Origin: Macrostomum lignano
Lineage: Eukaryota
Reading direction: 5' to 3'
Length of the DNA stretch: 64,000 nt
Assembly: GCA_002269645.1 (NCBI GenBank)
Contig: NIVC01000248.1
Span: forward strand, 1-64,000
Part shown: positions 36,786 through 62,391 of the stretch, piece by piece
Layout of the letters: each line of letters opens with the position of its first letter
Position numbering within the stretch: the stretch's first letter is position 1
The notes under the pieces: generated by a model
Databases searched by the model: none
Told to the model about the DNA's origin: nothing
The model's input: only the letters and a program-made list of their open reading frames with translations
Program-made: the position numbers and the translations under genes

Positions 36786-39136
36786 ATGCCAGGAGTGGGC
36801 GCACAGATTCTCACAGGTATGCATAATGCTTCCAACTTGTATTGTACTTATGGAAAAAACTTTTTAAATATTGAAAATTGAAAGAACTTTGTTTTACTGA
36901 CTTTCCGTTGTCAAATTTTACTAAATAATTCTCAATGCAGTTTCTTGATCGTTTCAGTTTTGTGCACTTTTGCCGGATTCGAGGCACTGGATTTGGAAGG
37001 TAAGTTGCTTTCTTGCGAATTTCGTCTAGCTTGCTTCTAGACACGGTTGTCCACTTCTAGACACGGTTGTCCACTTCTAGATTCGGTTGTCCACTTCTAG
37101 ATACGGTTGTCCACTTCTAGATACGGTTGTCCACTTCTAGATACGGTTGTCCACTTCTAGATACGGTTGTCCACTTCTAGATACGGTTGTCCACTTCTAG
37201 ACATGGTTGTCCACTTCTAGACATGGTTGTCCACTTCTAGACATGGTTGTCCACTTTGAGACACGCATGTCCACTTCCAGATAAGGGCCTTCCCAATTTA
37301 AGACAGGAAATTCAAACTACATTTCAGCCTCCAACGCGGGAAACAGGTCCATCAGCAACGGCAAAAGCACCAACACAACGCTTAACATTGACAGCTACTG
37401 GTCGAAAACATGCACAACGTTCGACGCAACACCTTGGGGCTGGCCGTGCTTGCTGGCCATACCTTCAAGAAGCAACAGTAGTAGTCCGACTTCTGAAAAC
37501 GGTGCGTGATGTACATGTATCTCGTACACTGTATTTGGCCGTTAATTACTTCGATGCAGAGTGTGTCAATGCCGAAATGCATGTCATGGAGTTCAAGAGA
37601 GGTTCTCTCGATTCACTGTTCAGAGATTCATAGATTCAGACATTCTTGACGACCTTTTATAACTCTGATGCCTATTCTATTCCAGGCGATAACTTCCCGC
37701 TGGGCAGCAAGGATGTCCCAATCGAGCCGCTGGACGCTCTGCACCGTGAATACCAGATTGATCGGCAACTGGGCAGCGGCGGCTTCGGCCGTGTCTTCCT
37801 GGCGACCCGGCGGTCGGACGGCACTCGGGTGGCCATCAAGTTTATTTTAAAGGAGAATCTGCCTGAGGACGCCTGGCACGAGTTGGTGGGTCAACCAACG
37901 CATTTGCATCAATTTTTATCGAGAATTATTTAGCAAAATGTTGCAACTGACTTAGTCAAAAGTTGACATTTTTTGGAGGACAAATACATAGGGGTTCCTT
38001 GTGGTTAGAGCGTCGGACTCACGACTTGAACTAAGCTCTTACGTAAGTTAGTGAGTGTGCAAGCGGGTGACATAATGATGCAGCTGTTTGAAGACTCTCT
38101 GTCAGTAAAAAAAATCAAGTTGGAGTACCAGCTTTATGTAATGCGAATGTATTTCTACTTTTTTGTTAAAATTTCCAGCCAGACGGTCACCGAATTCCAC
38201 TGGAGTTTCTGCTGCTGCACAAATGTCGACACATCAGTGGCGTTTTGCAGCCCATCAGCTTCCACGAAGGCCTCACTAGGTGGGCCATCGTGATGCCGAA
38301 ACTGGAAAAGGGCGTGGAACTGTTTAAATTGGTTTCGTACAGGGGATTTCTGTTGGAGTTCGAGGCCCGGAGCTTCATGAAACAGCTGATTGAGACGCTA
38401 ATCGCCTGTCACAAGGTTGGGGTCCTGCACAGGGACGTCAAAGAAGAAAACTTGCTGATCGATTTCCGGAATAAAAGTTTGAAGCTCATTGACTTCGGTT
38501 CCGGCGCCATTCTGAAGGAGGGGCCGTACACCGACTTTGATGGTGAGCATTAGCGGGTCGGAATATTACACTTAACCCTAACTTGAATTGGCAATTCCTC
38601 AGTAAGAACTAACGCTACACTACATTTGTCCTAGAAATGAATAGGAGGCCCCCAGTACAGGAACGCATACTTGTCATATCTAGAGCATTTAGCTTCGTAG
38701 TATGCTCTCAAGAACTTTTCAAACCGAAAATGTCTATGTGGCCTTCACCATCATGACCCACCTGTATGGTCGAACTCCGCCAACAACCCGCGCAGGCACC
38801 CGGGTGTACAGCCCGCCAGAGTGGATCCGTTGGCGACGCTACCGCGGCAAGCCGGCCGAGGTCTGGTCGCTGGGCATCCTGCTATTCAGCATGGTCTGCG
38901 GCGACGTGCCGTTCAAGCGGGAAAGCCAGATCGGCGTCACAGGTCCGCGGTTCGATCGCCAGTTGAGCCGGCAGTGCCGCCAGCTGATTCTGGCCTGCCT
39001 GCAAATCGAGCCCAACAGGCGGCCCAGCCTTCAGGAAATGCTGCGCCATCCCTGGATCGCTGATCCCAGCATCAGTGCCAATGCACCGTCCGCCGTGGCT
39101 GACAGGGAAGAGGACGACTGTGAAGACAATGGATGA
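36786..39136 (+). CDS. pim: PIM-family Ser/Thr kinase, paralog B; exons 36786-36816, 37328-37501 (both tentative), 37686-37885, 38179-38542, 38796-39136; ~369 aa
   Basis: Same kinase exon sizes (200 and 364 nt) and phases as paralog A; [41 protein letters not shown]. The two upstream exons join in frame through phase-1 GT/AG sites (MPGVGAQILT|ASNAGN...TSENG|DNFPLG). Confidence 0.9.
37030..37280. repeat. Intronic minisatellite, 20-bp unit
   Basis: (atacggttgtccacttctag)n. Confidence 0.95.
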
Positions 39137-42100: not shown

Positions 42101-42160
42101 ATCTTTTAATCCTCATATCAATCGCCCTTGCTTAATATGATCTATTTTTTCAGCAGTTGG

Positions 42161-45100
42161 ATGTGGCAAGTTTCCAACTTGGCCGGTTCCTTGTTGCTGC
42201 TATGGACACTGATGCAGCTTCAGACTGTCAAGCCAGCTTCTGCCACACGGCTCATCATGGAGGGTGGACTCTGCACTGACCGGATGCCCTGCCAGATTTC
42301 TCTGTGCCCCGGCAAGAACCAGGCGATAATGTGCCCCATCTACAACGAGAAGCTGGTCATTAAGTCCATTAGTTACCGTCCAGTGAAGTATGGAGCTTGC
42401 AGTCTGGGGGATGCTAGCCTAGGCGATTCAAATGATTGCGTCATCCTTGGCTCCGAGCTGATTGCTTCTCTGCAGAAAAAGTGAGTCTTGTGGTTTAGCG
42501 CTGAGCTGCTGCCCTCTGGAACCGTTGGAACGACAAAATGAACTCTTATTCATGACCATAATCAGTCATACATGTAGACATTTCTTAGTTGAAGAATAAA
42601 GTATAAGGATTGCAATCCACAGATTTCAGTCTAAAGACTACATGTGACTACATGTGCAGTCTAGAGACTACATTTGACTACATGTGCAGTCTACAGACTA
42701 CATGTGACTACATGTGCAGTCTACAGACTTCATGTGCAGTCTACAAACTACATGTGCAGTCTACAAACTACACGTGCAGCCTACAAACTACATGTGCAGC
42801 CTACAAACTACATGCGCAGTCTACAAACTACATGTGCAGTCTACAAACTACATGTGCAGTCTACAGACTACATGTGCAGTCTACAAACTACATGTGCAGT
42901 CTACAAACTACATGTGCAGTCTACAAACTACATGTGCAGTCTACAGACTATATGTACAGGCTACAGACTACTACAGTCTACAGATTACAGTATAGATTTT
43001 TCAGCTGGCTCACAGATCTATTATTAAGCTTCCAAGCTCAGCGACAAAGTACCCCAAACAATCCTTTCAAAAAACTGTTCGGGTCTCCCGCGTTCCAGAG
43101 AGCTGACCGAGTGCTATGACTCCATGGTAAAGACAATCCTGGATGAGATTAAGCTAGTGAAAGGCAATCCAGTTTGTACAATTCGTCTGGAGCAGTCTGT
43201 GGTAGAGCAGTGTTACAATAGGTCTTTAGCGGAATTTGGAGAAAGAAATTCTACCAGCACCGGATGCGCCGGCTTGAGTAGCAGATCGTATCGGCTTAAA
43301 ATCGAGTTGCAGAGTAAGAAAGTCACTTGTTGGACTGCTCATTGTGCTCGAGACTGTGTTGTCACGCAGCTTACCTTACTTTTTAGTTAGCATAGACAGA
43401 TCTGTTGTCTATGGCTCTAACCTGCCTGCCTTGGTTACTAGGAAATTAATAGCATGCTTTCGTGGTTTCCTATCTGTCACCTTGAATGCTTTGGTAGCCG
43501 TCTATTGATTTGATTTAATCTATTTTTCAACTGCCATATTAATTAGATTTTGTAAAACTGCACGGTAGTATTTCATCACTTTGCTCTTATTGTGTCTAGT
43601 TCTAATGGTGTTTTTAACCTTGTAGTGTCTTGCTGTCACCAGCTAACTCTTAATTTAGAGCCCACCCCCCATCCTCAGTGGCCACCACCAACCCCCATTC
43701 CTAAGTGGCTGACACCATCCCCATCCTCAGTGGCCGCCACCCCACCCCCATTCCTCAGTGGCTGACACCATCCCCATCCTCAGTGGCCGCCACCCCACCC
43801 CCATTCCTCAGTGGCTGACACCATCCCCATCCTCAGTGGCCGCCACCCCACCCCCATTCCTCAATAGCCGCCACCACCTCCATTCCTCAGTGGCTGCCAC
43901 CACCCCCATTTCTCAATGGCCGCGACCACCCCCATCCTCAGTGGCCGCCACCCACTATTCCTCAGTGGCTGCTACCCCCATTCCTCAGTGGCAGCCACTC
44001 CCATTCCTCAGTGGCAGCCACTCCCATTCCTCAGTGGCAGCCACTCCCATTCCTCAGTGGCAGCCACTCCCATTCCTCAGTGGCTGCCACCCCCATTCCT
44101 CATGGCCCACACCACTCCATTCCTCAGTGGTCGCCACCAACCCCCTCATTCCTCAGTGACCGCCACCACCCCCATTCCTCAGTGACCGCCACCACCCCTA
44201 TTCCTCAGTGACCGCCACCACCCCCATTCCTCAGTGACCGCCACCACCCCTCATTGTTTAGAGCTCCGCATCGCATGAATTAAAAAACAATTGATGAAAT
44301 GCAATAAAATGAAGCAATTTGTCACGATGGCAAAGTTTTGTTGCATTGGCTGTACTTTCCTTGCTCAATATAAAATTTCTATTTATAGAATTTGATGCAC
44401 AGTTACACGTGACACTAACTCTTATCAAGATGTAGTTACTGGCATGCGCCATATTATAAACAGTTGTCTACGCACCTGTTTAATAAGTGTCACTCAAAAA
44501 GGCCTTTTTATAGTGCTGACTGCTTGCGTATTCTTTCGTGTACTGTTATTGCATATTGTCACCTACTATTGTCGCCGCAGGACTAGCTGCTTTAACTCTA
44601 GGCCAGTTAACTGCAGCATTCACAATCCGGAGTCCCTGTCATCTGTGTTCGATCAGTGCCCTAAGCGGCGTAAAAAGCTGTCCATTTCCTTCTACTGTAG
44701 TAAGTATGTCCGCCTGTGTAAGCAATTCACCGGCGCCTAGGTGCGACCTTGCCGAAGTTCTCTGTACGTCATCTTTTTAGAGAAGCGGGCTCGATTTTTT
44801 TAATGAAACACAAATACATAAAATCAAATCATTGAGACTTTATCTAACTCATGTTCCCTGTCTAACTCATGTTTCACCATTGAGATCCTGTCTAACTCAT
44901 ATGTCATCAATGAGACCCTGTCTAACTCATGTTCCACCATTGAAACCCTGTCTAACTCATGTTTCACCATTGAGATCCTGTCTAACTCATATGTCATCAA
45001 TGAGACCCTGTCTAACTCATGTTCCACCATTGAGACCCTGTCTAAATCATGTTTTACCATTGAGATCCTGTTTAACTCATATGTCATCAATGAGACCCTG

Positions 45101-46456
45101 TCTAACTCATGTTTCATCATTGAGACCCTGTCTAACTCATGTTTCATCATTGAGACCCTGTCTAACTCATATGCCATCATTGAGACCCTGTCTAACTCAT
45201 GTTCCATCATTGAGACCCTGTCTAACTCATGATCCATCATTGAGACCCTGTCTAACTCATGATCCATCATTGAGACCCTGTCTAACTCATGATCCATCAT
45301 TGAGACCCTGTCTAACTCATGTTTCATCATTGAGACCCTGTCTAACTCATGTTCCATAACTGCGGAGTACACTGCAATGCCACAGTGGCACAAGAAACTG
45401 CTCTAAAACAGCTGTCTGCTCAGTACTTCATTAGCTAAGAATTTTCAGCAATGCAGCTTAATAATATATGTATAAGCATTGCATAGCACAAAAATATCTT
45501 TTAGATAGTTTTAACCGGAATCGCTATTTCTATTGTTAATTTTTTGTTGAATAATTTCTCAGTCAATCAACTTGATTTCGCAAATTCGCTTTAAAAATGC
45601 TTTTAAATTTCAAGACAATGATTGTTTTTTTATAATTTGTAAATAATTTCTGCTTCCATTGATTGCTGACAAATATTTGTGCGGATCTGCCAACAAAAAT
45701 TTTTGTGATTAAAAAGTTTTCTTTTTAAAAAATGAATCAAATTTTTAGAATTGGCCATTCCAAGTGATGACGTCACTAAGGTTCCTCGCCGTGATGAGTC
45801 ATCTACTGAGGCTACCGCTGCCACTCAGACAAGTAATTATTAAACTGATTAAATACTGCTAATTCATTAGTATAACTGCTATAGCAACCAGTAGTCATAG
45901 AAACCTTAAATAAAGGAAAGCGTTAATTAGTTGCCATAGCAGCTGGTAGTTGATTGTTGATAGTTTATATGGCAACTGTAAGCTAAAAGTTCACTCATAA
46001 TATATAATTGTTTGTCCTTTGCTTTCCATTACCATAGCAACCCAGGCAGCAGCAACTGCGAGACCACGCACAGAACAGGTCACTAAGCCAGCTGAGGTGA
46101 AAAGCACCACAATAAAATTGCTGGCATCAACCATGACTACTAGCTCTGTTGCCATGACAACAAAACCATCTAGTGGGTAAAATTTCACGGCTTCTGGTTT
46201 CCCCCGTTTGTTTTCAGTTCAGAGAAGCCGTGCTTCAGGCTTTGTGATTTTGTTAAGTATTCAGATTTTGCTTACGTCATATCAGCTTTTTTGTTTGCTT
46301 TGATGTAGCCCCTGCTTTTGTTGCTGGGTGGCCCAGTCTGTGAGACTGTCTGTCTGTCTGTCTGTGTCTTTCCGTCTGTCTGCCTGTCTGTCTGTCTGTC
46401 TGTCTGTCTGCCTGCCTGTCTGCCTGCCTGTCTGCCTGTCTGCCTGCCTGTCTGGC

Positions 46457-46489
<33 letters not shown>

Positions 46490-46532
46490 GCCTGCCTGCC
46501 TGTCTGCCTGCCTGTCTGCCTGCCTGTCTGCC

Positions 46533-46565
<33 letters not shown>

Positions 46566-46624
46566 TTCTGTCTGTCTGTCTGCCTGCCTGCCTGCCTGTC
46601 TGTCTGCCTGCCTGTCTGTCTGAC

Positions 46625-46661
<37 letters not shown>

Positions 46662-47527
46662 GTCTATCTGTCCGTTAGCATATTTCAGCACTGTCTGGAC
46701 TTGCAGTTGCCACCCAGCCAAGAAGCAGCCAGAACTGGAAAGTCTTCAGTCTGGTTGGCTGCCAATTAAGAGCCCAGTTGGGCAGGCAGTCTGCAGTCGG
46801 AAGTGCAGCTTTGAACACCCGCTAATAAATCATGGCACTGGCCTTTGCTTCTCCCTCTCCCAAATTCCGGTCTCCCCACTCCCTTCTGTCTTCGTCGTCT
46901 TTCCGAACCCCCCCCCCAGCCCGGAGCTCCCCTGCCCGGCGTTAGAAAATCCTAAATGAAAATTTCTATGAAGGCCGGGGGCGGGGCGCTCGCATTCACC
47001 CCCCCCCCCTAGGCTGCTGGGTTGCTGGAGAGACTGGAGCTGCGGTGAATGGACTGACTGATACGGAGCAATCTGCATTGTGGCAGATGCTGGCTGGGCT
47101 ATTATGGCATGTGTGCGGAGTGCTTCATCTGGCCCTACCTATGACCGCTACGGAATGCGAGTAAAGGTGCGAGGGCAAGCAGTCGATGCCGATTTCACTG
47201 ACCCCTGAGCACACACTCACACAGGGTATACACTACAATGGCCCAGTCTTCTCATTGTCGGGCATGAGCACTCTGTGCTTTGGGGCTTGGCGGTTGGCTG
47301 CGCACGGAATCGAACCCGGGTACCTTGGTGGGATAGTCAGACCGCTGAGCTGCTCTGCTCTTGTGCTAGTCTGTCTGTGTCTGTGTCTGTCTGTCTGTCT
47401 GTGTCTGTGTCTGTCTGTGTCTGTGTCTGTCTGTCTGTGTCTGTCTGTCTGTGTCTGTCTGTGTCTGTCTGTCTGTCTGTGTCTGTGTCTGTCTGTCTGT
47501 CTGTGTCTGTCTGTCTGTCTGTGTCTG

Positions 47528-47558
<31 letters not shown>

Positions 47559-47651
47559 GTCTGTGTCTGTCTGTGTCTGTCTGTCTGTCTGTGTCTGTCT
47601 GTCTTTCTGTCTGTCTGTCTGTCTGTCTGTCTGTGTCTGTCTGTCTGTCTC

Positions 47652-47714
<63 letters not shown>

Positions 47715-50700
47715 GTCTGTTTCTGTCTGTTTCTGTCTGTCTGCCTGTGTCTGTTTCTGTCTGTCTGCCTGTGTCTGTTTCCGTCTGTCTGCCTGTGTCT
47801 GTTTCTGTCTGTCTGCCTGTGTCTGTTTCTGCAGTCTGTTTGTGTCTGCCTGTCTTGTCTTGTCTTGTCTTTCTGTCTGTTTCTTCCCGTCTGTCTTTCT
47901 ATCTTTTTTAGTGCGTACCATTACAGACGGAACACCCAAAGGTCTGTAGCAGTCCCCCATGCAGTTTCGAGTTGTTTGGCGATCCCAGCCAGCATGCAAT
48001 ACCGTGTATCAGTTGCGCGCATTCATTACTGCCCGCTTTATCAATCCGCCCCCCCCCCCTCACCAGGCAGGATTGGCGCAGCTGGTGGTCCCTGAAATGC
48101 GATTGCAGCCATTCTATAGTGAATTTTTCGAACACTCGATTTGCTTTTCCGCTACAATATTGCCGGCCTTTTTCTGCGCATCTTCTACATTTTTTAATAA
48201 GAAGAAAGTTGCACTGTTTGCTTTCCGCAATTTTTAAATTCCGTCTCGCCTGCCCCGCGAACTGCGTCGCTTGAACGGCGCTGGCGGTGGTTTTCGCGAA
48301 TCGCTATTAGCCGTCGCCTTCTCGCCCACCCCAGGCTCGCCTCCGCTGCCCGTCTGCTCGCCGCCGCGCACCGTGCTGAACCCGTTGACGGGCTTCTGCG
48401 AGACCCTCGCCGACTTCACCGGGCAGGAGTGCAGGCAGCTCGCCGAGCACCTGGCGTCAGTGTACCAGCGGGCTGATGGCACCTGTGCCCTACTGCCCAA
48501 CTCCACTAGCGGCATGCGAGTGGAGGTGAGCCCGTGTGGATTGCTAATCTAGCCCGTGTGGATTGCTAATCTAGCCCATGTGGATTGCTAATCTAGTGCA
48601 TGTGGATTGCTAATCTAGTGCATGTGGATTGCTAATCTAGCCCTTGTGGATTGCTAATCTAGTGCATGTGGATTGCTAATCTAGCCCGTGTGGATTGCTA
48701 ATCTAGCCCATGTGGATTGCTAATCTAGTGCATGTGGATTGCTAATCTAGTGCATGTGGATTGCTAATCTAGCCCTTGTGGATTGCTAATCTAGTGCATG
48801 TGGATTGCTAATCTAGCCCGTGTGGATTGCTAATCTAGCCCATGTGGATTGCTAATCTAGCCCGTGTGGATTGCTAATCTAGCCCATGTGGATTGCTAAT
48901 CTAGTGCATGTGGATTGATAATCTAGCCCGTGTGGATTGCTAATCTAGTGCATGCGGATTGCTAATCTAGCCCGTGTGGATTGCTAATCTAGCCCATGTG
49001 GATTGCTAATCTAGTGCATGTGGATTGATAATCTAGCCCGTGTGGATTGCTAATCTAGTGCATGCGGATTGCTAATCTAGCCCGTGTGGATTGCTAATCT
49101 AGTGCATGTGGATTGCTAATCTAGCCCGTGTGGATTGCTAATCTAGTGCATGTGGATTGCTAATCTAGCCCTTGTGGATTGCTAATCCAGCCCATGTGGA
49201 TTGATAATCTAGCCCTTGTGGATTGCTAATCTAGCCCATGTGGATTGCTAATCTAGCCCGTGCGGATTGCTAATCTAGCCCATGCGGATTGCTAATCTAG
49301 CCCATGCGGATTGCTAATCTAGCCCATGTGGATTGCTAATCTAGTGCATGTGGATTGCTAATCTAGCCCATGTGGATTGCTAATCTAGTGCATGTGGATT
49401 GCTAATTTAGTGTGGATTGCTAATCTAACGAATTTGGGCCCTTCTCTATCTGAAGAAAGATGAAAATAATCTTCAATGTATTAATGATATGAATAATTAC
49501 TTTTGTGTTGCACTGAGCATTGAGCATGGGTTATCCATTAGTTACAGACAGACACGCATGTTACGAGTACATTAGGAAAGCAAAACAGATGCATCTATAA
49601 GTTCTACCCGATAATCAACTTTGTCCAGTGTAATAAGTTGCAGTTAGACATGATGCATGTACCGTTTTGCAGAGTTTATGATATCATATATAATTCTGTT
49701 TAGTTTACCTCCGATGGCCTCAAAGTTTTATTGACTCAAGCCCCCCCCCCCAACTGGCCTGTCCTGAGCGATAAGCTACGAGTCTGATAAAAATTCTGTC
49801 GGGTCACGCTGGGAACCTCGGTGAGACTTCCGATTGGCAAGCATGGCGTGGCCTCTGCCAGGCTTCTCTGTTTGCTTAGCGGTTTTTTACACCCTTTCTT
49901 TATCGATAAGGCAGCTAGTGGTGCTTTTCATATTTCACATTTTATCTGAGATATTGTAATATTAGCAAGTTCTACAAAAAGCTTATTCAATAATAAAACT
50001 TTGGGATGTACGCCAATGTACTTGGTATGTGCATCAATTTAAATTTGGGATGAAAACCATGTAACTTTAGGATGCACATCATGTAACTTTAGGATACACA
50101 TTATGTAAATTATTATTATTAAATTTAGGATGAAAACCATGTAACTTTAGAATTTACAATACGTTACTTTAATCTACATCATGTAACTTTAGGATGTACA
50201 TCATGCAACTTTAGTATGTACATCATGTAACTTTAGAAGGTACCTCTAGTAAAAAATTTTCGATGTACACATCGGCAAGTTTTTATGTAAATCTGTAGAT
50301 TTACTCCAGATGTGGGTTTCTACACCTGCAGTTCTATAAGCCATGCGTCTCAAAAGCTGTCAATGGCCCATCTCAGTCCAACCGTATCGCCCTCGCCCTC
50401 GCCGTCGCCCAGATCTCGCGCGTCTCCCAGCCGGCCGTCCGGGCCCGCATGCTGTCCGGCTTTGCCAAATCGCAGCCGTTCCGCGACCTCGGCCAGGTGC
50501 GCCAGTTCGCCAGCCTGCTGGCCGCCCAACTGCCGGCCGGCGCCAACGGCTCCGAGCTCGGCGCCGGACAGCTTAGCCGGACAGTCGGCCACCTGCTGGA
50601 CACTGTGGCCGAGTTTGCCGGCAAAGGCCTGCTGGCCGGGTCGGACGCGCCTGAGTCGGAGGCCGAGTCCCGCAGCCTCGCCGCGGCGGCGAGCTCCGTG

Positions 50701-53700
50701 CTGGCCGGCCTGGACGACATCGGGCGGGGCCTGCAGTTCGCCCGACCGGGCTTCGGCGCCGCCGCGTCCGGAATCGGTGAGGCTGGGGAGGCTGAGGCTG
50801 TGATGATGAATTTCCCGATCTGGAAACTGCAGCTAGCGGGTCAGGGACATGCTTTACCTTGAATCTCTTCCAATGATTTTGAAAACTAATAAATCCCTGG
50901 ATTTAAGACTTCTCAGATCCATCCTCTTCACAGATCCCAGATGCTCACCGATCCAAGATGCTCACAGATCCCAGATGCTCACAGATCCCAGATGCTCACA
51001 GATCCCAGATGCTCACAGATCCCAGATGTTCACAGATCTCAGATGCCCACAGATCCCAGATGCTCACCGATCCAAGATTCTCACAGATCCCAGATGCTCA
51101 CAGATCCCAGATGCTCACAGATCCCAGATGCTCACAGATCCCAAATGCTCACAGATCCCAGATGCTCACAGATCCCAGATGCTCACAGATCCAAGATGCT
51201 CACCGATCCAAGATGCTCACAGATCCCAGATGCTCAAAGATCCCAGATGCTCACAGATCCCAGATGCTCACAGATCCCAGATGCTCACCGATCCCAGATG
51301 CTCACAGATCCCAGATTCTCACAGATCCCAAATGCTCACAGATCCCGAATACACCCAGATCCCTTAACTTAAGTGCTATAATATTTCAAATACTGTCAGA
51401 TCTCAATTAAACCGAAATTAAAATCCTCCCAAATCTTAGATCCTCACACAGATTCCCTACATCCAAATTTTCTAGCCTTTAAAATCACCTAAACGATCCC
51501 AAGGCACTTAAGCGCTCCATGCAAATCTAAAGTACATTACTGATGCATCGCATATGCGAATCTCCCACAGCCGTGTCAGTGCAGCGGCTGCGTCCAGACG
51601 GCACCCAGCTGGTGCAGTCAGCTGATCGCAGTTCAACTGTAAAGCTTCGTCTGCTCCCCGATTCGGCCCAGGGCACCGCCGTTTCCATGGTAACCACCGT
51701 GCTAAATCTGCCGCATCTGACCCGGAGACTGGGCACGGCCAAGCAGCCTGTGGTATCCAATGTGATTCAGGCTACCCTGTACTCTGGCGGTGAGAGGCTC
51801 GGTGAGTGACTGCACCTGGGATCTGGGATCTGGGATCTGTGATCTAGGATCTGGTATCTGGGATCTAGGATCTGGGATCTGGGATCTAGGATCTGGTATC
51901 TGGGATCTAGGATCTTGTATCTAGGATCTAGGATCTGGTATCTGGGATCTAGGATCTGGGATCTGGTATCTGGGATCTGGGATTTAGGATCTGGTATCTG
52001 GGATCTAGGATCTGGGATCTGGGATCTGGTATCTGGGATCTGGGATCTAGGATCTAGGATCTGGGATCTGGGATCTGGTATCTGGGATCTAGGATCTTGT
52101 ATCTAGGATCTATGATCTGGTATCTGGTATCTGGGATCTGGTATCTGGGATCTGGGATTTAGGATCTGGTATCTGGGATCTAGGATCTGGGATCTGGGAT
52201 CTGGGATCTGGGATCTAGGATCTAGGATCTGGGATCTGGGATCTGGGATCTGGGATCTGGGATCTGAGATCTGGGATCTGAGATCTGGGATCTGAGATCT
52301 GGGATCTGGGATCTGAGATCTGGGATCTGAGATCTGGGATCTGAGATCTGGGATCTGAGATCTGGGATCTGAGATCTGGGATCTGAGATCTGAGATCTGG
52401 GATCTGAGATCTGGGATCTGAGATCTGGGATCTGAGATCTGGGATCTGAGATCTGGGATCTGAGATCTGGGATCTGAGATCTGGGATCTGAGATCTTGGA
52501 TCTGAGATCTGGGATCTGAGATCTGGGATCTGAGATCTGGGATCTGAGATCTGGGATCTGAGATCTGGGATCTGAGATCTGGGATCTGAGATCTGGGATC
52601 TGAGATCTGAGATCTGGGATCTAGAATCTTGGATCTAGGATTTGGGATCTGGGATCTGAAATCTAAGTCAGTGATCAATCAGCGCCCTAACCTGCCCTTG
52701 ACAATGACCCTTGCAGACGCCGCCTCATCGGGCCAGCCGGCAGCCGAGGTGCTGCTGCTGATCCCGCACAGCCGCATCTCCGGGCAGCTCCGCCAGTGCG
52801 TGCACCTCCTGCCGCCGCCTTCGCAAGCCGCAGCCGCCGCCTCCTCGCCCCCCGAGTTCCTGTCTCCAAGCGGCTGCCGGGTGGCCGTGGAGCTCTCGAG
52901 CCCGACTGTCACCGCCTGCCTCTGCCGCCACCTGAGCAGCTTTGCCGTCACGGTGCTGCCCGGCACCGCCTGGCTCGGCGTAGAGACTCACCGCCTGTGG
53001 CGGCTGCACTCGGAGCCACTGAGAATTCTCACCTGGATCTGCCTGACCGTCTCCATTGTCTGCCTGCTGCTCACCTCCATCACCTATATTGTGGTTCGGA
53101 TGCAGACTCCCATGGCTGACAAGTCCATCGCCACTCTGCATCGGGTGCACCGGAGTCTTTGTCTGGCCCTCATGCTGGGCCAGGCGCTGTTTTTGGCCGC
53201 GTTCCAGCCGCTTGATGGTGCGTATCCTGCTCTGGGGAGTCTGCGACCTCTGTGGGTTAGATAGTAATCGGGGAATGGCACTAAGATTGAAAGTATTGGC
53301 TGAGGTGGATAGAGAAGAGAGGGAGACAGCGAGGTAGAGAGGAGAGGGAGACAGCGAGGTAGAGAGTAGAGGGAGACAGCGAGGTAGAGAGGAGAGGGAG
53401 ACAGCGAGGTAGAGAGGAGAGGGAGACAGCGAGGTGAGGTAGAGAGGAGAGGGAGACAGCGAGCTAGAGAGGAGAGAGAGACAGTGAGGTAGAGAGGAGA
53501 GGGAGACAGTGAGGTAGAGAGGAGAGGGAGACAGTGGGGTAGAGTAGAGGGAGACAGCGAGGTAGAGAGGAGAGGGAGACAGCGAGGTAGAGAGGAGAGG
53601 GAGACAGCGAGGTAGAGAGGAGAGGGAGACAGCGAGGTAGAGAGGAGAGGGAGACAGCGAGGTGAGATAGAGAGGAGAGGGAGACAGCGAGCTAGAGAGG

Positions 53701-56700
53701 AGAGAGAGACAGCGAGCTAGAGAGGAGAGAGAGACAGTGAGGTAGAGAGGAGAGGGAGACAGTGGGGTAGAGTAGAGGGAGACAGCGAGGTAGAGAGGAG
53801 AGAGAGACAGTGAGGTAGAGAGGAGAGGGAGACAGTGAGGTAGAGAGGAGGGGGAGACAGGGAGGTAGAGAGGAGAGGGAGACAGCGAGGTAGAGAGGAG
53901 AGGGAGACAGCGAGGTAGAGAGGAGAGGGAGACAGCGAGGTGAGGTAGAGAGGAGAGGGAGACAGCGAGCTAGAGAGGAGAGAGAGACAGTGAGGTAGAG
54001 AGGAGAGGGAGACAGTGGGGTAGAGTAGAGGGAGACAGCGAGGTAGAGAGGAGAGAGAGACAGTGAGGTAGAGAGGAGAGGGAGACAGTGAGGTAGAGAG
54101 GAGAGGGAGACAGCGAGGTGAGGTAGAGAGGAGAGGGAGACAGCGAGCTAGAGAGGAGAGAGAGACAGTGAGGTAGAGAGGAGAGGGAGACAGTGGGGTA
54201 GAGTAGAGGGAGACAGCGAGGTAGAGAGGAGAGGGAGACAGCGAGGTAGAGAGGAGAGGGAGACAGCGAGGTGAGGTAGAGAGGAGAGGGAGACAGCGAG
54301 CTAGAGAGGAGAGAGAGACAGTGAGGTAGAGAGGAGAGGGAGACAGTGGGGTAGAGTAGAGGGAGACAGCGAGGTAGAGAGGAGAGAGAGACAGTGAGGT
54401 AGAGAGGAGAGGGAGACAGTGGGGTAGAGTAGAGGGAGACAGCGAGGTAGAGAGGAGAGGGAGACAGCGAGGTAGAGAGGAGAGGGAGACAGCGAGGTGA
54501 GGTAGAGAGGAGAGGGAGACAGCGAGCTAGAGAGGAGAGAGAGACAGTGAGGTAGAGAGGAGAGGGAGACAGTGGGGTAGAGTAGAGGGAGACAGCGAGG
54601 TAGAGAGGAGAGAGAGACAGTGAGGTAGAGAGGAGAGGGAGACAGTGAGGTAGAGAGGAGAGGGAGACAGCGAGGTGAGGTAGAGAGGAGAGGGAGACAG
54701 CGAGCTAGAGAGGAGAGAGAGACAGTGAGGTAGAGAGGAGAGGGAGACAGTGGGGTAGAGTAGAGGGAGACAGCGAGGTAGAGAGGAGAGGGAGACAGCG
54801 AGGTAGAGAGGAGAGGGAGACAGCGAGGTGAGGTAGAGAGGAGAGGGAGACAGCGAGCTAGAGAGGAGAGAGAGACAGTGAGGTAGAGAGGAGAGGGAGA
54901 CAGTGGGGTAGAGTAGAGGGAGACAGCGAGGTAGAGAGGAGAGAGAGACAGTGAGGTAGAGAGGAGAGGGAGACAGTGGGGTAGAGTAGAGGGAGACAGC
55001 GAGGTAGAGAGGAGAGGGAGACAGCGAGGTAGAGAGGAGAGGGAGACAGCGAGGTAGAGAGGAGAGGGAGACAGCAAGGTGAGATAGAGAGGAGAGGGAG
55101 CACAGAACCTAGGTACAACTGCCAGTGTCCCTATATGCAAGGCTCCATCCGCTCCCCTCCGCCGCCAGCCACCCCCATCGCCGCCTGCAAGCTGCTGTCC
55201 GTGCTGACTCTGTACGCCCTGCTGTGCGCCTTCTGCTGGCTGCTGTGCGAGGGCCTGATGTACACCCACAGTCTGGTGATTGTGCTGCCCAGGGTGGACT
55301 CTGCCTTTGCCAAGGTGAGGAAATTGAGTTGAATCAATTCTGATGACCGCTGAGCATACACACGTACATACCTGCAAGCGACCTCCCACCGACCCACCAA
55401 CCTCAAACCGACGTCAAACCGACCTCTCACTGACCTCAAACCGACCACCCACCTACCTCAAACCGACCTCAAACCTACCTCAAACCGAACTTTTAACAAC
55501 CTCAAACCGATTTCCCACCGACCTTAAACCGACCTTCCGACCTCAAACCGACCTCCCACCGACCTCAAACCGAACTCCCAACGACATCAAACCGACCTCC
55601 CACCGACCTCAAACCGAACTCCCAACAACCTCAAACCGACCTCTGATCGATCTTTTCAACGACCTCCCGCTGACGTCATACCGAACTCGAACCATCGACC
55701 TCACCTGACCCCTGCATGCTCTCTGCCGGTCACAGGTGAAATTCTGGCACTACTGCCTGGCCAGCGGCGTCGCTCCGCTGCTCATCGTGCTGCCCACGGC
55801 GGCGCTCAGGCCGGAGCAGCTCATCCAGACCGAGGCCGACGCGTCCGCGGACTCCGGCGGCCTCTTGCGGCCCTCTGTCTGCTGGCTGAGCGGCGACCAC
55901 GGCGTCAGCTTCGCCTTCATCGGGCCGGCCATGGCCGTCTGTCTCGTTAACCTCTGCCTGTTCGCCGTCATCATGCGCCGACTCGCCGGCACCCGCAGCG
56001 ACGCCGCCGATGCTGTCGGAGGATCGGCGGCCACCTCCGCCAGCCTCCGCCTGTCCTACCTGAGCCGCCAGATGAAGGTCACGGCCACCCTGGCCTGCCT
56101 GCTGGGCCTCACCTGGCTGCTCGGCCTGATGTTTCTATTCGCTGAGACGCACCTGTTCATAGTGGCGCAGTACCTGTTCACCCTGCTCAACGGCCTGCAG
56201 GGCTGCTTCATCTTCGCTACTCAGGTGTGCGCGCATAAGCGAGTCCGCGAGGACTGGGAGAAATTCCTCATTGACGGCAGGCGGACGCCCGGCTCTCTGC
56301 GGCGCCTGCTGGAGCAGCGGAGGAACGCCAGGCTGAGCGCCCCCGGCTCCGGGTCCACGCCAGCCAACAAGGCGCAGCAGGGCCGGCTTCGGCAGCCGCT
56401 GCTTCCGCCGCAGGGGCAGCAGCAGCAGCAGCTGTATTTGCCCTATGAAGGCGATGCCAGATATCTGGTTGACAAGGTTGGCGCACCCGGTTTTCATGCT
56501 GTTTGGGATTCGTGAATGTTGAGATTTGTGAATATTGGGATTTGTGAATGTTGGGATTCGTGAATGTTGGAATTTGTGAATATTGGGATTTGTGAATTTT
56601 GGGATTCGTGAATGTTGGAATTTGTGAATGTTGAGATTCGTGAATGTTGAGATTCGTGAATGTTGAGATTCGTGAATGTTGAGATTCGTGAAATTTGTAG

Positions 56701-57516
56701 GATCTGAAAATATGAGAGCTACTTAATTTTTCCATTCGTGACTTTGCATTTCTAAATGCTAGGATTTGTGAATTTTTGAATCCGTGAACATTCGCGCCCC
56801 CCCCCCAGTCCTCCCAGTCTGACAGCGGGCTCCCCAGCCAGCTGTCGCGGCTGCTCAGCGTCTTCCGTCGAAAGCAGCAGCCGCAGCGGCAGCACCGGCG
56901 TGACTGCCAGCAACAGCTGCGGCTTCATCAGCAGCAGCCGCCGCAGCAGCCCTCGGACACGGTCACCGACCTGTCCAACCTGTCCCCGCCCCGCCTGACC
57001 GGCGACTGCGGCTGCCCCGTCGTCGTCAATGTCAACAACAACAACAGAGGGAGCAGCAGCACCAGCGGCGTCGGCAGCGGCAGCAGCGCCTGGGCGTCAC
57101 GGGGCTCGCGCGGCACCGAGGCGCCGTCGCAGGCGCCGTTGGTCACGGAGGAGAACTTCACCTCCTGCTGCGACCCGACCGCCGCCGCCGCCATCGACAG
57201 GCCCGACTGCCGCGGCCAGGATCGGCGACAGCAATCCAGCCGGCGGCCGCAGCAGTTGGAGTCCGGCTTCTTCGACAGTCGGGCATTTGGCGACACCCGA
57301 CTCGACGACCAGTCTCTGTTCGACATCACGCACAGCCAGGCGGAACCGGCGCTGCGCAGCCCGAAGTCGCCGCTGCCGGAGCCGCCGCCGATCGACACCT
57401 TGCCGGCGAGGTGCCCCGGCAGCCGGGAGCTGCTGTACAATGTCACGGATACGCAGGCCAGCAGCGAGTACCTCGTGCCCGATTGTAAGCCGACCGAGCA
57501 GCTGACCAAAGTTTGA
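42161..57516 (+). CDS. Adhesion GPCR, latrophilin/CIRL-like (signal peptide, SUEL/Gal-lectin-like domain, Thr-rich stalk, GAIN/GPS, secretin-family 7TM, long C-tail); ~1206-1238 aa
   Basis: Exons 42161-42480, [43099-43313 or 44581-44699], 45749-45832, 46038-46172, 48335-48525, 50377-50776, 51571-51801, 52672-53217, 55169-55314, 55736-56476, 56809-57516 splice in frame. GPS GCRV...[11 protein letters not shown]; 7TM motifs [40 protein letters not shown]; ends LTKV. Extra exons at 46.7 and 48.07 kb are possible. Confidence 0.9.
42620..42990. repeat. Intronic minisatellite, 20-bp unit
   Basis: (ctacaaactacatgtgcagt)n. Confidence 0.95.
43099..43313 (+). CDS. Adhesion GPCR candidate alternative exon 2a (lectin C-terminal half, long form)
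   Basis: ttccag|A GAG...; [11 protein letters not shown]...[10 protein letters not shown]...QCYNR...[17 protein letters not shown]; donor A|gtaaga; phase 2 to 1, 215 nt. Confidence 0.6.
43660..44250. repeat. Intronic minisatellite, 23-31-bp variants
   Basis: (cagccactcccattcctcagtgg)n and longer variants. Confidence 0.93.
44581..44699 (+). CDS. Adhesion GPCR candidate alternative exon 2b (lectin C-terminal half, canonical Cys spacing)
   Basis: cgccgcag|G ACT...; [39 protein letters not shown]; donor A|gtaagt; phase 2 to 1, 119 nt. Confidence 0.7.
44832..45355. repeat. Intronic minisatellite, 30-bp unit
   Basis: (ttgagaccctgtctaactcatgtttcatca)n. Confidence 0.96.
46340..46672. repeat. (TCTG/CCTG)n microsatellite
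   Basis: Direct reading. Confidence 0.97.
47045..47362 (-). mobile_element. Putative tRNA-derived SINE in an adhesion GPCR intron
   Basis: Minus-strand A-box-like agcagctcagcggt (47354-47341) and B box ggttcgattcc (47316-47306), then ~250 bp of unique body ending in tcagtcagtc; no TSD identified. Confidence 0.4.
47370..47905. repeat. (TCTG/TGTCTG)n microsatellite
   Basis: Direct reading. Confidence 0.97.
48528..49430. repeat. Intronic minisatellite, 22-bp unit, ~41 copies
   Basis: (gtggattgctaatctagcccat)n, starting at the splice donor. Confidence 0.97.
50930..51362. repeat. Intronic minisatellite, 17-bp unit
   Basis: (gatgctcacagatccca)n. Confidence 0.96.
51816..52660. repeat. Intronic 7/14-bp repeat
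   Basis: (ggatctg)n with gatctag, gtatctg and gatctga variants. Confidence 0.97.
53310..55100. repeat. Intronic purine-rich minisatellite, ~25-bp unit
   Basis: (gagacagcgaggtagagaggagagg)n. Confidence 0.97.
55375..55705. repeat. Degenerate intronic repeat (ccgacctc core)
   Basis: Recurrent aaaccgacctc / ccaccgacctc. Confidence 0.85.
56505..56790. repeat. Intronic minisatellite, 16-bp unit
   Basis: (tgaatgttgagattcg)n. Confidence 0.93.
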
Positions 57517-57609
57517 ACCTGACTGACTTCGGGCGATTTTATTGAACAACTGCAGTGTAAATAGAATTTATACAAATGAATGAATATAGGTGAGCAAAGA
57601 TCAGCAAAT

Positions 57610-57960
57610 ATAGAATCTGTGAATCTGGGATCTGTGAATTTGGGATCTGTGAATCTCGGATCTGTGAATCTGGGATCTGTGAATTTGGGATCTGTGAATC
57701 TCGGATCTGTGAATTTGGGATCTGTGAATTTGGGATCTGTAAATCTAGGATCTGTGAATCTGGGATCTGTGAATTTGGGATCTGTGAATTTGGGATCTGT
57801 GAATCTGGGATCTGTGAATTTGGGATCTGGGGTCTGTGAATCTGGAATCTGTGAATCGATGATCTGTGAACTTAAAATCTGTGAATTGAGAATCTTTGAA
57901 TTTAGAATCTGTGAATCGAGGATCTGTGAATCGATTATCTGTGAATCAATGGTCTGTGAA
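57610..57960. repeat. Minisatellite, 15-bp unit, just 3' of the GPCR stop
   Basis: (gatctgtgaatctgg)n. Confidence 0.93.
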
Positions 57961-58269
57961 CAGCGTCAATTTTGAAGCGCTCTTTAATAACGCAAGTCAG
58001 TTGGGAAACGTAAAGAATATTTAAAACCAACAGAAATAAGAGATGCGCAGTCTGACTTAATTAGTCCGCTCGGCGGTGACGAAGCAATTATTGCTTTTTA
58101 TTATTTACTTTATAATTTTCTTCACCGTGTTGCGCTACTGCCAGTAGCACTGCAAGAATTTCTCGCTTCTCTGTAACAGCGAATTAGTTAATTAGGTAAA
58201 TTTTGCTGGCCTTTTTAATGCGATTTCGATTGTAGCTCATATTTTGAATACAACGTATTGACATGCAGA

Positions 58270-58608
<339 letters not shown>

Positions 58609-59199
58609 ACATGACAGGTGGTTTTTTCTTTTATTTTTGTGCCTTCTCGCTAAGCACTGCAAGCCTTTGTATATTCTCTATTACAAATTTTAAAGCAAAA
58701 TTGTCACAACGAAGCTTGGAAAACAGACTTTTTTAGTTTTGCAGTTGCAATTTATTGATAGCCACATCACCTTGCATTGTTCACTTTTGCACTCGCTGTT
58801 GCGATATTAATTTCGCATTTTTGCATAAATTACAAATCTATTAAACATTGTGTCTTTATTTTGTGCCTGTAAATCTATTTCTAAGATCCAGATCGCATGT
58901 TGCCGGATAAGAATGTTGCCAGCCCCAATCAAAATGTTATCAGCCCAAGAACGTTGCTTTTTGAAAAAGATTCATTCTGCTTTTTTGCCGCGCCAACCTG
59001 CTTAAAAACGAGTTCGCGAAATTGTGCTTGAGAGTTCGCGCCCACCGCAAATATAATGCAAATTTGTTCAGCTGTCAGCTGACCTACTGATTGAATGCTT
59101 ACTGGAGCTTTCACCGCTTACATGCGAGCGTAATATGTCATGATAGTTGCCTTTGCTGTTTGTTTATCAGTGAAGCTGGCGTTCTTAACGTCATCTTAG

Positions 59200-59680
59200 T
59201 GAATACTCTGGTGATATGCCACACCTTAATGAGTCCTCTGGTGATATGCCACACCTTAATGAGTCCTCTGGTGATATGCCACACCTTCTTAATGAGTCCT
59301 CTGGTGATATGCCACACCTTCTTAATGAGTCCTCTGGTGATATGCCACACCTTCTTAATGAGTCCTCTGGTGATATGCCACACCTTCTTAATGAGTCCTC
59401 TGGTGATATGCCACACCTTCTTAATGAGTCCTCTGGTGATATGCCACACCTTCTTAATGAGTCCTCTGGTGATATGCCACACCTTCTTAATGAGTCCTCT
59501 GGTGATATGAGACACCTTAATGAGTCCTCTGGTGATTTGAGACACCTTAATGAGTCCTCTGGTGATTTGAGACACCTTAATGAGTCCTCTGGTGATATGA
59601 GACACCTTAATGAGTCCTCTGGTGATATGACACACATTTATGAGTCCTCGGGTAATATGACGCACCTTAATGGGTCTCTC
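59200..59680. repeat. Minisatellite, 30/33-bp unit
   Basis: (gatatgccacaccttcttaatgagtcctctggt)n. Confidence 0.96.
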
Positions 59681-62166: not shown

Positions 62167-62391
62167 TGGAGCGAGTACAGTTTGGCAGGGGTGTTGACTT
62201 TAAAGAGTGATTGTGAAAAAAATTGATAAGAGCACAGAGGCTGAAAATTTATTATCAAGCATCTGAAGGGTGGTAGTATATGTGCATAAAAAGGCGCGCA
62301 GTTGTGACATATCTCAAAACTTTAGTGCACTCCTCCAATCATCGTCTTTCAACACTGCTCTTAGGAAATTGAAAACTTTCTGGCTGTCGGC

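What the first reader, a model, noticed from the sequence alone, without database searches (positions are those of the whole stretch)
42161..45832. Adhesion GPCR with two apparently mutually exclusive exons encoding alternative halves of its lectin domain
Seen: exon 1 encodes the signal peptide and the first four SUEL-type cysteines and ends in phase 2. Two downstream open exons, 43099-43313 (215 nt) and 44581-44699 (119 nt), both start in phase 2, end in phase 1 and have good AG/GT sites. They look homologous (C[YF][DN]S...PV(N)C[TS]I...C...L.I) and each supplies four Cys. Including both, or neither, shifts the frame, and I found no phase 1-to-2 exon between them that could start a second lectin domain. 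Known: SUEL domains have eight Cys, and latrophilin ligand choice is tuned by splicing near the lectin domain. Inference: the gene can swap half of its ligand-binding fold, giving two chimeric lectin domains. I do not know of this arrangement in latrophilins. The sugar-binding YGR and DPC motifs are altered (YRP, DQC), which points to protein rather than rhamnose ligands.
Basis: partly seen in the sequence, partly recalled or inferred. Interest (0 to 1): 0.78.

Follow-up and report, generated by a model that had tools for sequence, protein, structure and literature searches.

The report
Possible alternative lectin-half exons, flatworm latrophilin
A flatworm latrophilin-like receptor gene builds its outer lectin-like domain from a fixed first exon plus a second-half exon that may come in two mutually exclusive versions, an arrangement I also found in a crinoid, amphioxus, a nemertean and a scallop; the second flatworm version is very divergent and has no transcript evidence.

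Summary
The window is Macrostomum lignano scaffold NIVC01000248.1. Every coordinate, phase and splice site in the finding checks out. Including both exons or neither gives a premature stop.

Exon 1 plus exon 2B is a real but very divergent SUEL/rhamnose-binding lectin (RBL) domain. Pfam misses it. A profile of 31 verified RBL domains matches it end to end (18.4 bits, E 1e-7).

Exon 2A is the only other open segment in that intron with strong, in-phase splice sites. It resembles 2B around the first three cysteines (p about 4e-4 to 1e-2). The RBL profile does not recognise it. It lacks the terminal cysteine, is 96 nt longer than 2B, and has non-coding-like codon usage. No transcript or orthologue data could be reached.

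The arrangement itself has precedent. Crinoid and amphioxus latrophilins have annotated isoforms that swap this half. Nemertean and scallop genes carry a second intact copy. In the three loci read as DNA the copies share the phases (2 to 1, length 2 mod 3). I found no paper describing it.

Verdict: partly supported. I put true mutually exclusive use in the flatworm at about 0.5.

The parts
42140..42153 (+). Pyrimidine run plus AG, 8 nt upstream of the ATG; possible (trans-)splice acceptor for the first coding exon
   Evidence: Read from the sequence. Its function is inference only.
42161..42480 (+). Exon 1: start codon, signal-peptide-like N-terminus, two extra Cys, then RBL first half (C1-C4, YRP in place of YGR); ends in phase 2 at GTGAGT
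   Evidence: RBL profile positions 3-51; second-best of 1360 ORFs in the window. Not in the NCBI gene models P0128 or P0001.
42627..42971 (.). 20/30-nt satellite array in the intron between exon 1 and 2A
   Evidence: Source of many spurious open AG..GT segments.
43099..43313 (+). Exon 2A (candidate): 215 nt, phase 2 to 1, CAG acceptor, GTAAGA donor, 71 codons, four Cys, two N-x-S/T sites; no Cys at the C8 position
   Evidence: only strict in-phase candidate besides 2B. Cys-anchored similarity to 2B p=4e-4, and closer to 2B than to 33 other RBL halves. Against: RBL profile 4.1 bits, ORF rank 18, codon score -0.29.
43662..44255 (.). 26-nt satellite array in the intron between 2A and 2B
44581..44699 (+). 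Exon 2B: 119 nt, phase 2 to 1, canonical RBL second half (C5-C8, DQC in place of [12 protein letters not shown] in place of KYLEVxYxC)
   Evidence: 13.1 bits alone, above 841 natural ORFs and 1000 shuffles. Best ORF of 1360 in the window, profile positions 52-92. Codon score +0.26.
44856..45357 (.). 30-nt satellite array in the intron between 2B and exon 3
45749..45832 (+). Exon 3: 84 nt, phase 1 to 1, acidic and Thr-rich linker
   Evidence: Joins in frame to 48311.
46038..46172 (+). Candidate Thr/Ser-rich stalk exon (135 nt, phase 1 to 1, with the weak donor GTGGGT; the stronger GTAAAA donor 4 nt further on would break the frame)
   Evidence: Unverified.
48311..48525 (+). Exon linking the N-terminal exons to the GAIN region (alternative acceptor at 48335, same phase). 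The annotated model starts at an internal ATG at 48514.
   Evidence: Homology to paralogue P0002 extends to about 48311. Exact mapping of P0128.
50413..50776 (+). GAIN-region exon (helical part)
   Evidence: Exact mapping of P0128. Homology to P0002.
51571..51801 (+). GAIN-region exon
52717..53217 (+). GPS motif (CLCRHL|SSFAV) plus TM1-TM2
   Evidence: Pfam GPS 26.2 bits and 7tm_2
55169..55314 (+). TM3 exon
55736..56476 (+). TM4-TM7 exon and start of the C-terminal tail
   Evidence: 7tm_2 67 bits
56809..57516 (+). Last coding exon (C-terminal tail, stop codon)

Best explanation
The gene is a divergent latrophilin/CIRL-type adhesion GPCR of Macrostomum lignano. Its N-terminal rhamnose-binding-lectin (RBL) domain is split by an old phase-2 intron just before the fifth cysteine.

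The exon for the second half (C5-C8) was duplicated in tandem, as in latrophilin genes of other phyla. The spliceosome joins exon 1 to either 2A or 2B. Both exons are 2 mod 3 in length, so mRNAs with both or neither are frameshifted and presumably removed by nonsense-mediated decay.

Exon 2B yields a canonical eight-cysteine RBL fold. Exon 2A yields a chimeric domain with the same first half, a longer C5-C6 segment, an extra glycosylated loop and a displaced last cysteine. That would change the surface, and probably the C2-C8 disulfide, of the ligand-binding module.

Shown: the exon architecture, the RBL identity of exon 1+2B, and the tandem copies and phases in crinoid, nemertean and scallop DNA. 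Annotated isoform swaps are shown for the crinoid and amphioxus.

Inferred: that 2A descends from 2B's ancestor, that 2A is spliced, that decay removes the double and null forms, and that the swap tunes protein-ligand choice.
For: 1. Phases, splice sites and frame logic.
2. 2A is the only other strict-site, in-phase open segment in the intron. Such segments are absent from the gene's other 11.6 kb of intron.
3. Flanks of the four ordered Cys of 2A match those of 2B: score 15 against a null of -17 +/- 9, p=4e-4, and 0 of 73 natural Cys-rich ORFs reach it. 2A is closer to 2B than to any of 33 other RBL halves (maximum 6). Shared lineage-specific residues: aromatic-[ND]-S after C5, PV before C6, Q before C7.
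4. Soft-gap alignment places 2A in the top 0.4-1.7% of natural ORFs.
5. Precedent. Antedon isoform X2 versus X1 and X3-X6, and Branchiostoma X5 versus X6, differ only in the RBL second half. Antedon has two tandem exons of 116 and 122 nt, phase 2 to 1. Tubulanus and Mizuhopecten each have two intact copies with the same phases.
6. The same phase-2 intron occurs in a vertebrate ADGRL1 exon.
7. Exon 1+2B is an RBL domain, and the 7TM is closest to ADGRL3.
Against: - 2A is not recognised by the RBL profile: 4.1 bits (11% of its own shuffles reach this), glocal z -0.55, ORF rank 18 of the 1144 ORFs that received a score.
- With standard gap costs, 2A versus 2B is not significant (p 0.15).
- 2A has no Cys at the C8 position, so the canonical C2-C8 bond (PMC3269628) cannot form as usual.
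- 2A is 215 nt against 119 nt for 2B. The real pairs in other species are 107-122 nt.
- Codon usage of 2A (-0.29 per codon) equals the GC-matched non-coding null. Exon 1, 2B and exon 3 are positive.
- No protein in 5.8 billion matches exon 1 or 2A. NCBI models omit the whole 5' region. No docking/selector RNA pairing stands out.
- The Cys-anchored test was devised after I had seen the motifs.
Confidence: 0.5

Rival explanations
1. 2B is the constitutive second half of the lectin domain and 2A is not a productive alternative exon. 2A is either a decaying relic of an old exon duplication or a chance open frame in a repeat-rich intron. If it is ever spliced in, the product is misfolded or the event is noise.
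For: - No RBL profile signal in 2A beyond composition.
- Missing C8 and the 96-nt length excess.
- Non-coding-like codon usage.
- Standard alignment to 2B not significant.
- No annotation or protein evidence.
- Decayed copies of this exon exist elsewhere: a partial third copy sits downstream of the Antedon pair.
- The blind scan that finds both copies at 29-47 bits in three other species finds only 2B here.
Against: - A relic or a chance ORF is not expected to keep 71 open codons, a CAG acceptor with a pyrimidine tract, a GTAAGA donor and both correct phases. Strict pseudo-exons are about 1 locus per 27 kb in this gene's non-coding sequence.
- The Cys-anchored similarity is specific to 2B.
- An even number of Cys is kept.
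Confidence: 0.4
2. Exons 1-3 (plus the Thr-rich exon at 46038) are not the 5' end of the GPCR gene. They form a separate small gene for a secreted lectin that stops at the TAA at 46178. The GPCR's true first exons lie elsewhere.
For: - NCBI models P0128 and P0001 do not include these exons.
- The exon at 46038 reads into a stop when its strongest donor is ignored.
- The 46.2-48.3 kb stretch is full of microsatellites and has no clear exon.
Against: - P0128 starts at an internal Met with no signal peptide, and paralogue P0002 continues upstream of that point.
- Exon 3 joins 48311 or 48335 in frame.
- 21 of 149 nearest 7TM relatives carry an N-terminal RBL and are named latrophilin/Cirl-like.
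- No other signal-peptide exon was seen between 46.2 and 48.3 kb.
Confidence: 0.1
3. Both 2A and 2B are included in one mRNA together with an unseen frame-restoring exon, giving two partial or tandem lectin modules.
For: Some relatives have two tandem RBL domains (P0150, P0204, P0185). HMMER's best, non-significant placement of 2A is on the C4-helix-C6 part of the domain.
Against: The intron holds only three GTRAG donors, all belonging to 2A or 2B. No first-half-like ORF lies between them in the blind scan. The interval is mostly a 26-nt satellite.
Confidence: 0.03

Closest known systems
Antedon mediterranea (crinoid) ADGRL2-like gene, OZ206125.1, isoform X2 versus X1 and X3-X6
   Same: The RBL domain is split by a phase-2 intron in the codon before C5. 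Two tandem second-half exons sit at L004 5583-5698 and 10075-10196. Both run phase 2 to 1 and are 2 mod 3 in length. Annotated isoforms contain one or the other.
   Different: The two copies are 116 and 122 nt, 56% identical, and both are fully canonical (38-41 bits, all four Cys, DPC and KYLEV). The flatworm 2A is 215 nt, non-canonical and unannotated.
Branchiostoma lanceolatum ADGRL2-like isoforms X5 and X6 (XP_066298603 and XP_066298604)
   Same: Two 1184-aa isoforms are identical except for residues 103-136, the RBL second half from C5 to just past C8.
   Different: Seen at protein level only, because the locus could not be fetched. The halves are of equal length, 65% identical and canonical. 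The gene also has an HRM region.
Unannotated second copies in Tubulanus polymorphus (nemertean) and Mizuhopecten yessoensis (scallop) latrophilin genes
   Same: A proximal, intact, in-phase copy of the RBL second-half exon lies in the intron before the annotated copy: L005 3526-3638 and L006 24835-24941. As in the flatworm, the proximal copy is the unannotated one. In the scallop it is also the more divergent copy (29 versus 47 bits).
   Different: Both copies keep the four Cys positions and the core motifs. Their use in mRNA is also unverified.
Vertebrate latrophilins ADGRL1-3 (lectin domain, splice site A)
   Same: N-terminal RBL domain, GPS and 7TM (ADGRL3 is the closest solved structure). 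The same phase-2 intron lies before C5. Alternative splicing next to the lectin domain tunes teneurin binding (Boucard 2014, as cited in PMC6422961).
   Different: The known vertebrate splice site lies between the lectin and olfactomedin domains, not inside the lectin fold. Reviews searched do not mention a duplicated second-half exon. Vertebrates also have OLF and HRM domains, which are absent here.
Classical mutually exclusive exon clusters from tandem exon duplication
   Same: Adjacent homologous exons of equal phase that each replace part of one fold. Frame incompatibility as an exclusivity mechanism is general knowledge, and related papers were listed.
   Different: Such exon pairs usually have near-equal lengths and clear sequence similarity. 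Neither holds here.

Membership tests
SUEL / rhamnose-binding lectin (RBL) domain, Pfam PF02140 | Eight cysteines in conserved order and spacing (C1-C8) | tested here: met
   Exon 1+2B: all eight Cys align to a profile of 31 verified RBL domains, positions 3-92. For exon 1+2A the C8 position has no Cys.
SUEL / rhamnose-binding lectin (RBL) domain, Pfam PF02140 | Match to the curated Pfam model above its cut-off | tested here: not met
   No Pfam hit for either isoform even at E<=10, or for the 865-aa protein at E<=1. No phmmer hit in PDB.
SUEL / rhamnose-binding lectin (RBL) domain, Pfam PF02140 | Significant match to a family profile built from solved and Pfam-positive RBL domains | tested here: met
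   Exon 1+2B: 18.4 bits, E 1.3e-7 (one target), 0 of 2000 shuffles. 2B alone: 13.1 bits. The exon 1 and 2B ORFs rank 2nd and 1st of 1360. 2A alone: 4.1 bits, inconclusive.
SUEL / rhamnose-binding lectin (RBL) domain, Pfam PF02140 | YGR and DPC-x-x-x-KYL motifs (sugar-binding signature, PMC3269628) | tested here: not met
   YRP, DQC and KKL in exon 1+2B; VEQC and no KYL-type strand before a Cys in 2A.
SUEL / rhamnose-binding lectin (RBL) domain, Pfam PF02140 | Alpha/beta RBL fold with disulfides C1-C3, C2-C8, C4-C7, C5-C6 | not testable with these tools
   Structure prediction refuses spliced sequences.
Latrophilin / CIRL-type adhesion GPCR (ADGRL) | Secretin-like 7TM preceded by a GPS motif | tested here: met
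   7tm_2 113 bits; GPS 24-26 bits, above the cut-off; CLCRHL|SSFAV.
Latrophilin / CIRL-type adhesion GPCR (ADGRL) | 7TM closest to ADGRL among adhesion GPCR subfamilies | tested here: met
   Best solved match is ADGRL3 (99.7 bits), then ADGRE5, ADGRL2 and ADGRD1. RBL-bearing relatives are named latrophilin/Cirl-like. No phylogeny was made.
Latrophilin / CIRL-type adhesion GPCR (ADGRL) | N-terminal RBL domain on the same polypeptide | tested here: inconclusive
   The RBL exons lie 6 kb upstream on the same strand and join in frame. No transcript links them, and annotation omits them.
Latrophilin / CIRL-type adhesion GPCR (ADGRL) | Hormone-receptor (HRM) domain and, in chordates, an olfactomedin domain | tested here: not met
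   No HRM or OLF hit. HRM is also absent in Drosophila Cirl, and OLF is chordate-only (PMC6422961).
Mutually exclusive exon pair from tandem exon duplication | Adjacent exons with identical entry and exit phase and usable splice sites | tested here: met
Mutually exclusive exon pair from tandem exon duplication | A mechanism that forbids double inclusion or skipping | tested here: met
   Both exons are 2 mod 3: a stop at codon 269 (both) or 113 (neither). That decay removes these mRNAs is inferred. No competing RNA structure was evident.
Mutually exclusive exon pair from tandem exon duplication | Sequence homology between the two exons | tested here: inconclusive
   p=0.15 (standard gaps), 0.004-0.017 (soft gaps), 4e-4 (Cys-anchored, post hoc). 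tblastn E=26. One 17-nt stretch is 14/17 identical.
Mutually exclusive exon pair from tandem exon duplication | Similar exon length | tested here: not met
   215 versus 119 nt. Pairs in other species are 116/122, 113/107 and 107/110 nt.
Mutually exclusive exon pair from tandem exon duplication | Transcripts contain one exon or the other, never both | not testable with these tools
   No transcript data reachable. No protein containing exon 1 or 2A exists in the searched collections.

The most novel reading that the evidence does not exclude
A tandem pair of mutually exclusive exons for the C-terminal half of the RBL domain is an old, widely retained module of bilaterian latrophilin-type receptors (crinoid, amphioxus, nemertean, scallop, flatworm). 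It lets one receptor present two chimeric lectin domains with a constant and a variable half. In the flatworm, one half has been remodelled so far (lost C8 position, two insertions, new glycosylation sites) that it probably rewires a disulfide and creates a new protein-binding surface.
Probability: 0.4. Interest if true: 0.75.

Novelty: new variant of a known kind. Interest (0 to 1): 0.55.

Why it matters
The RBL domain is the part of latrophilins that contacts partners: teneurins in vertebrates (PMC6422961), and in C. elegans a Toll-like receptor (listed) and a Notch ligand (PMC12255766).

If half of this small disulfide-locked fold can be exchanged by splicing, one gene could switch ligand specificity without changing the rest of the receptor. 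In my text searches the latrophilin and adhesion-GPCR reviews did not mention such a switch.

The cross-phylum pairs found here make the idea directly testable. Candidate systems are the crinoid, amphioxus, the scallop, the nemertean and the experimentally tractable flatworm M. lignano.

The work also shows that the public M. lignano gene models for this receptor lack their signal peptide and lectin domain.

Tried and rejected
- Pfam and PDB sequence searches of both isoforms gave no hit.
- A search of 5.8 billion proteins with exon 1+2A+3 gave no hit.
- Structure prediction and the exhaustive protein search refuse spliced sequences, so neither isoform could be modelled.
- The sister scaffold locus L001 starts 143 nt after 2A and is 100% identical around 2B, so it carries no evolutionary signal.
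- Paralogue P0002 and the two amphioxus isoforms are not on record as genes.
- The profile search with latrophilin RBLs returned only vertebrates.
- Open frame plus AG/GT as evidence was rejected: 136 such segments exist in the intron.
- The glocal profile test of 2A under four gap regimes showed no signal.
- The codon-usage score is dominated by GC content and gives only weak evidence.
- The search for docking/selector complementarity found only short matches of the kind expected by chance. One is a 12-nt match between 42511-42522 and the 2A acceptor.
- 2A as a repeat or transposon fragment was rejected: it is unique in the window.
- Literature searches for mutually exclusive exons inside the RBL domain found nothing relevant.
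Full report
**Source and gene.** The window is identical to bases 38514-64000 of Macrostomum lignano scaffold NIVC01000248.1 (GCA_002269645.1) wherever the two could be compared, so window and record coordinates coincide. A near-identical second copy lies on scaffold NIVC01000572.1. The NCBI model P0128 (900 aa) maps exactly onto window exons 48514-48525, 50413-50776, 51571-51801, 52717-53217, 55169-55314, 55736-56476 and 56809-57516. It starts at an internal Met without a signal peptide, whereas the 49%-identical paralogue P0002 continues further upstream. Pfam finds GPS (24-26 bits) and 7tm_2 (113 bits) but no HRM, GAIN or lectin model. The closest solved GPS+7TM structure is ADGRL3. Of the 149 nearest relatives of the TM4-7 exon, 21 carry a strong N-terminal RBL domain. 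The named ones are called latrophilin Cirl-like or ADGRL-like.

**Observation.** Exon 3 leaves phase 1 and joins the acceptor at 48311 (or 48335) in frame. This gives full-length proteins of 1142 aa with 2B and 1174 aa with 2A. Including both exons gives a stop at codon 269, and including neither gives a stop at codon 113. Openness plus AG/GT alone is not rare, because the intron has 136 such in-phase segments, many inside satellites. With a YAG acceptor, at least 65% pyrimidines and a GTRAG donor, only 2A and 2B survive. The same filter finds nothing in the gene's other 11.6 kb of intron and one locus in 15.4 kb of antisense.

**Is it a lectin domain?** Pfam, PDB and the large protein collection give no hit for either isoform. 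I therefore built profiles from RBL domains whose sequences I had verified.
- The first profile used ten domains from solved structures.
- The second added 21 domains from the receptor's own 7TM relatives, giving 31 in all.
- Exon 1+2B matches the 31-domain profile from position 3 to 92 with all eight Cys aligned: 18.4 bits, E 1.3e-7 for one target, 0 of 2000 shuffles as good.
- Exon 1 alone gives 9.1 bits.
- 2B alone gives 13.1 bits, above all 841 natural ORF windows and all 1000 shuffles.
- In a blind scan of all 1360 ORFs of the window, the 2B ORF (profile 52-92) and the exon 1 ORF (profile 3-51) rank first and second.

The intron position is old. A vertebrate ADGRL1 exon ends ...SQ(AG|gt), phase 2, one residue before C5. 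Exon 1 here ends in phase 2, two residues before C5. YGR is replaced by YRP and DPC by DQC. Several relatives also depart from these motifs, and the motifs themselves are described in PMC3269628.

**Exon 2A on its own merits.**
- Against:
  - The profile gives it 4.1 bits. That is the top 1% of natural ORFs, but 11% of its own shuffles reach it.
  - A glocal second-half alignment gives z=-0.55 and stays null under four gap regimes.
  - Its ORF ranks 18th among the 1144 ORFs that received a score in the blind scan.
  - Standard-gap alignment to 2B is not significant (p 0.15), and tblastn gives E=26.
  - Its fourth Cys lies 15 residues before the exon end, and no Cys follows the last strand-like LKIEL. 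The canonical C2-C8 bond (PMC3269628) therefore cannot form in the usual way.
  - It is 96 nt longer than 2B.
  - Its codon score (-0.29 per codon) equals the GC-matched non-coding null (-0.33), while exon 1, 2B and exon 3 are positive.
- For:
  - Soft-gap alignment puts it in the top 0.4-1.7% of natural ORFs.
  - A Cys-anchored comparison of the +/-3 flanks of the four ordered Cys scores 15 against -17 +/- 9 (p=4e-4; p=0.014 and 0.002 for +/-2 and +/-4). None of 73 natural Cys-rich ORFs reaches it.
  - 2A resembles 2B more than any of 33 other RBL halves (maximum 6, median -16), as a local duplication predicts.
  - The shared residues are lineage-specific: aromatic-[ND]-S after C5, PV before C6 and Q before C7.

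I devised the anchored test after seeing the motifs, so I discount it.

**Precedent found on the way.**
- Branchiostoma lanceolatum ADGRL2-like isoforms X5 and X6 are both 1184 aa and differ only in residues 103-136, the RBL second half.
- Antedon mediterranea isoform X2 differs from X1 and X3-X6 in the same way. Its locus has the first-half exon ending CG|gtaaga (phase 2) and two tandem exons of 116 and 122 nt. Both run phase 2 to 1, both are 2 mod 3, and they lie 4.4 kb apart. A partial third, decayed copy lies just downstream.
- Tubulanus polymorphus and Mizuhopecten yessoensis each hold a second intact, in-phase copy (113 and 107 nt) in the intron before the annotated copy. It is absent from all the isoforms I could list.
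- Distal copies of the nemertean and the scallop are more alike (55%) than distal and proximal copies across the two species (33-45%). This hints that the pair predates their split.
- Text searches of latrophilin and adhesion-GPCR reviews did not turn up this arrangement.

**Weighing.** The precedent raises the prior that this particular exon is duplicated in a spiralian latrophilin-like gene. 2A keeps a 71-codon frame, both phases and strong sites where such pseudo-exons are rare, and it resembles its neighbour specifically. On the other side, 2A has lost the features that every verified copy keeps, and nothing shows that it is spliced. I put true mutually exclusive use at about 0.5, a non-productive relic or chance ORF at about 0.4, and other readings at about 0.1.

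**What could not be done.** No transcript data were reachable. The sister scaffold copy of 2A and other Macrostomum genomes could not be read.

Noticed in passing
window 42161-48513: The public NCBI models of this receptor (P0128 on this scaffold, P0001 on NIVC01000572.1) start at internal methionines. They lack the signal peptide, lectin domain and stalk, so the whole 5' part of the gene is unannotated.
   Followed up: partly
L001 (NIVC01000572.1 387801-410217, reversed), matching window 43456-63341: A second copy of the locus exists in the same assembly. It is 100% identical around 2B and exon 3 and differs mainly in satellite arrays. It could be a haplotig or a recent duplicate. It starts just after 2A, so 2A could not be compared.
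   Followed up: partly
L005 3526-3638 (Tubulanus polymorphus OZ123227.1 9838467-9838579); L006 24835-24941 (Mizuhopecten yessoensis NEDP02005572.1 74906-75012): Intact, in-phase, unannotated second copies of the RBL second-half exon in nemertean and scallop latrophilin genes (46 and 29 bits). They suggest an old, conserved mutually exclusive pair.
   Followed up: partly
L004 about 10380-10445 (Antedon mediterranea): A partial third copy of the RBL second-half exon (YNIFTEKCNGNFKYLPNHFFCC, 10.7 bits) lies about 180 nt downstream of the distal alternative exon. It looks like a decayed relic.
   Followed up: no
window 42511-42522 and 43092-43103: A 12-nt stretch 30 nt downstream of the exon 1 donor is 92% complementary to the 2A acceptor site (GCCCTCTGGAAC / GTTCCAGAGAGC). 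It could mask or present that acceptor, but matches of this size are expected by chance.
   Followed up: no
window 43111-43210: HMMER's best, non-significant placement of 2A on the RBL profile is not C5-C8 but C4-helix-C6: [28 protein letters not shown] against profile positions 44-75. The C-to-C spacings resemble those of latrophilin-1 (20 versus 18 and 11 versus 12 residues).
   Followed up: partly
window 42627-42971, 43662-44255, 44856-45357: Each of the three introns around the alternative exons carries its own satellite array, with units of 20/30, 26 and 30 nt. (CTGT)n-type microsatellites fill 46346-46672 and 47369-47880; the ORFs at 58184-58660 read as the same kind of repeat (not run through the tandem-repeat finder).
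   Followed up: no
window 25686-29380 and 37646-39136 (+ strand): Two tandem protein-kinase gene copies upstream of the receptor. I judged them kinases, PIM-like, from ORF translations only. The nearer one is not annotated in the NCBI record.
   Followed up: no
window about 62392 to the end (L002 23879-27871): A GH3-domain gene (643 aa; Pfam GH3, GH3_M, GH3_C) lies downstream of the receptor and runs off the window.
   Followed up: no
window 46038-46176: A Thr/Ser-rich open exon follows exon 3. It keeps the frame only with the weak donor at 46172 (GTGGGT). The stronger GTAAAA donor 4 nt later would shift the frame, or the exon could end a short secreted isoform at the TAA at 46178.
   Followed up: partly
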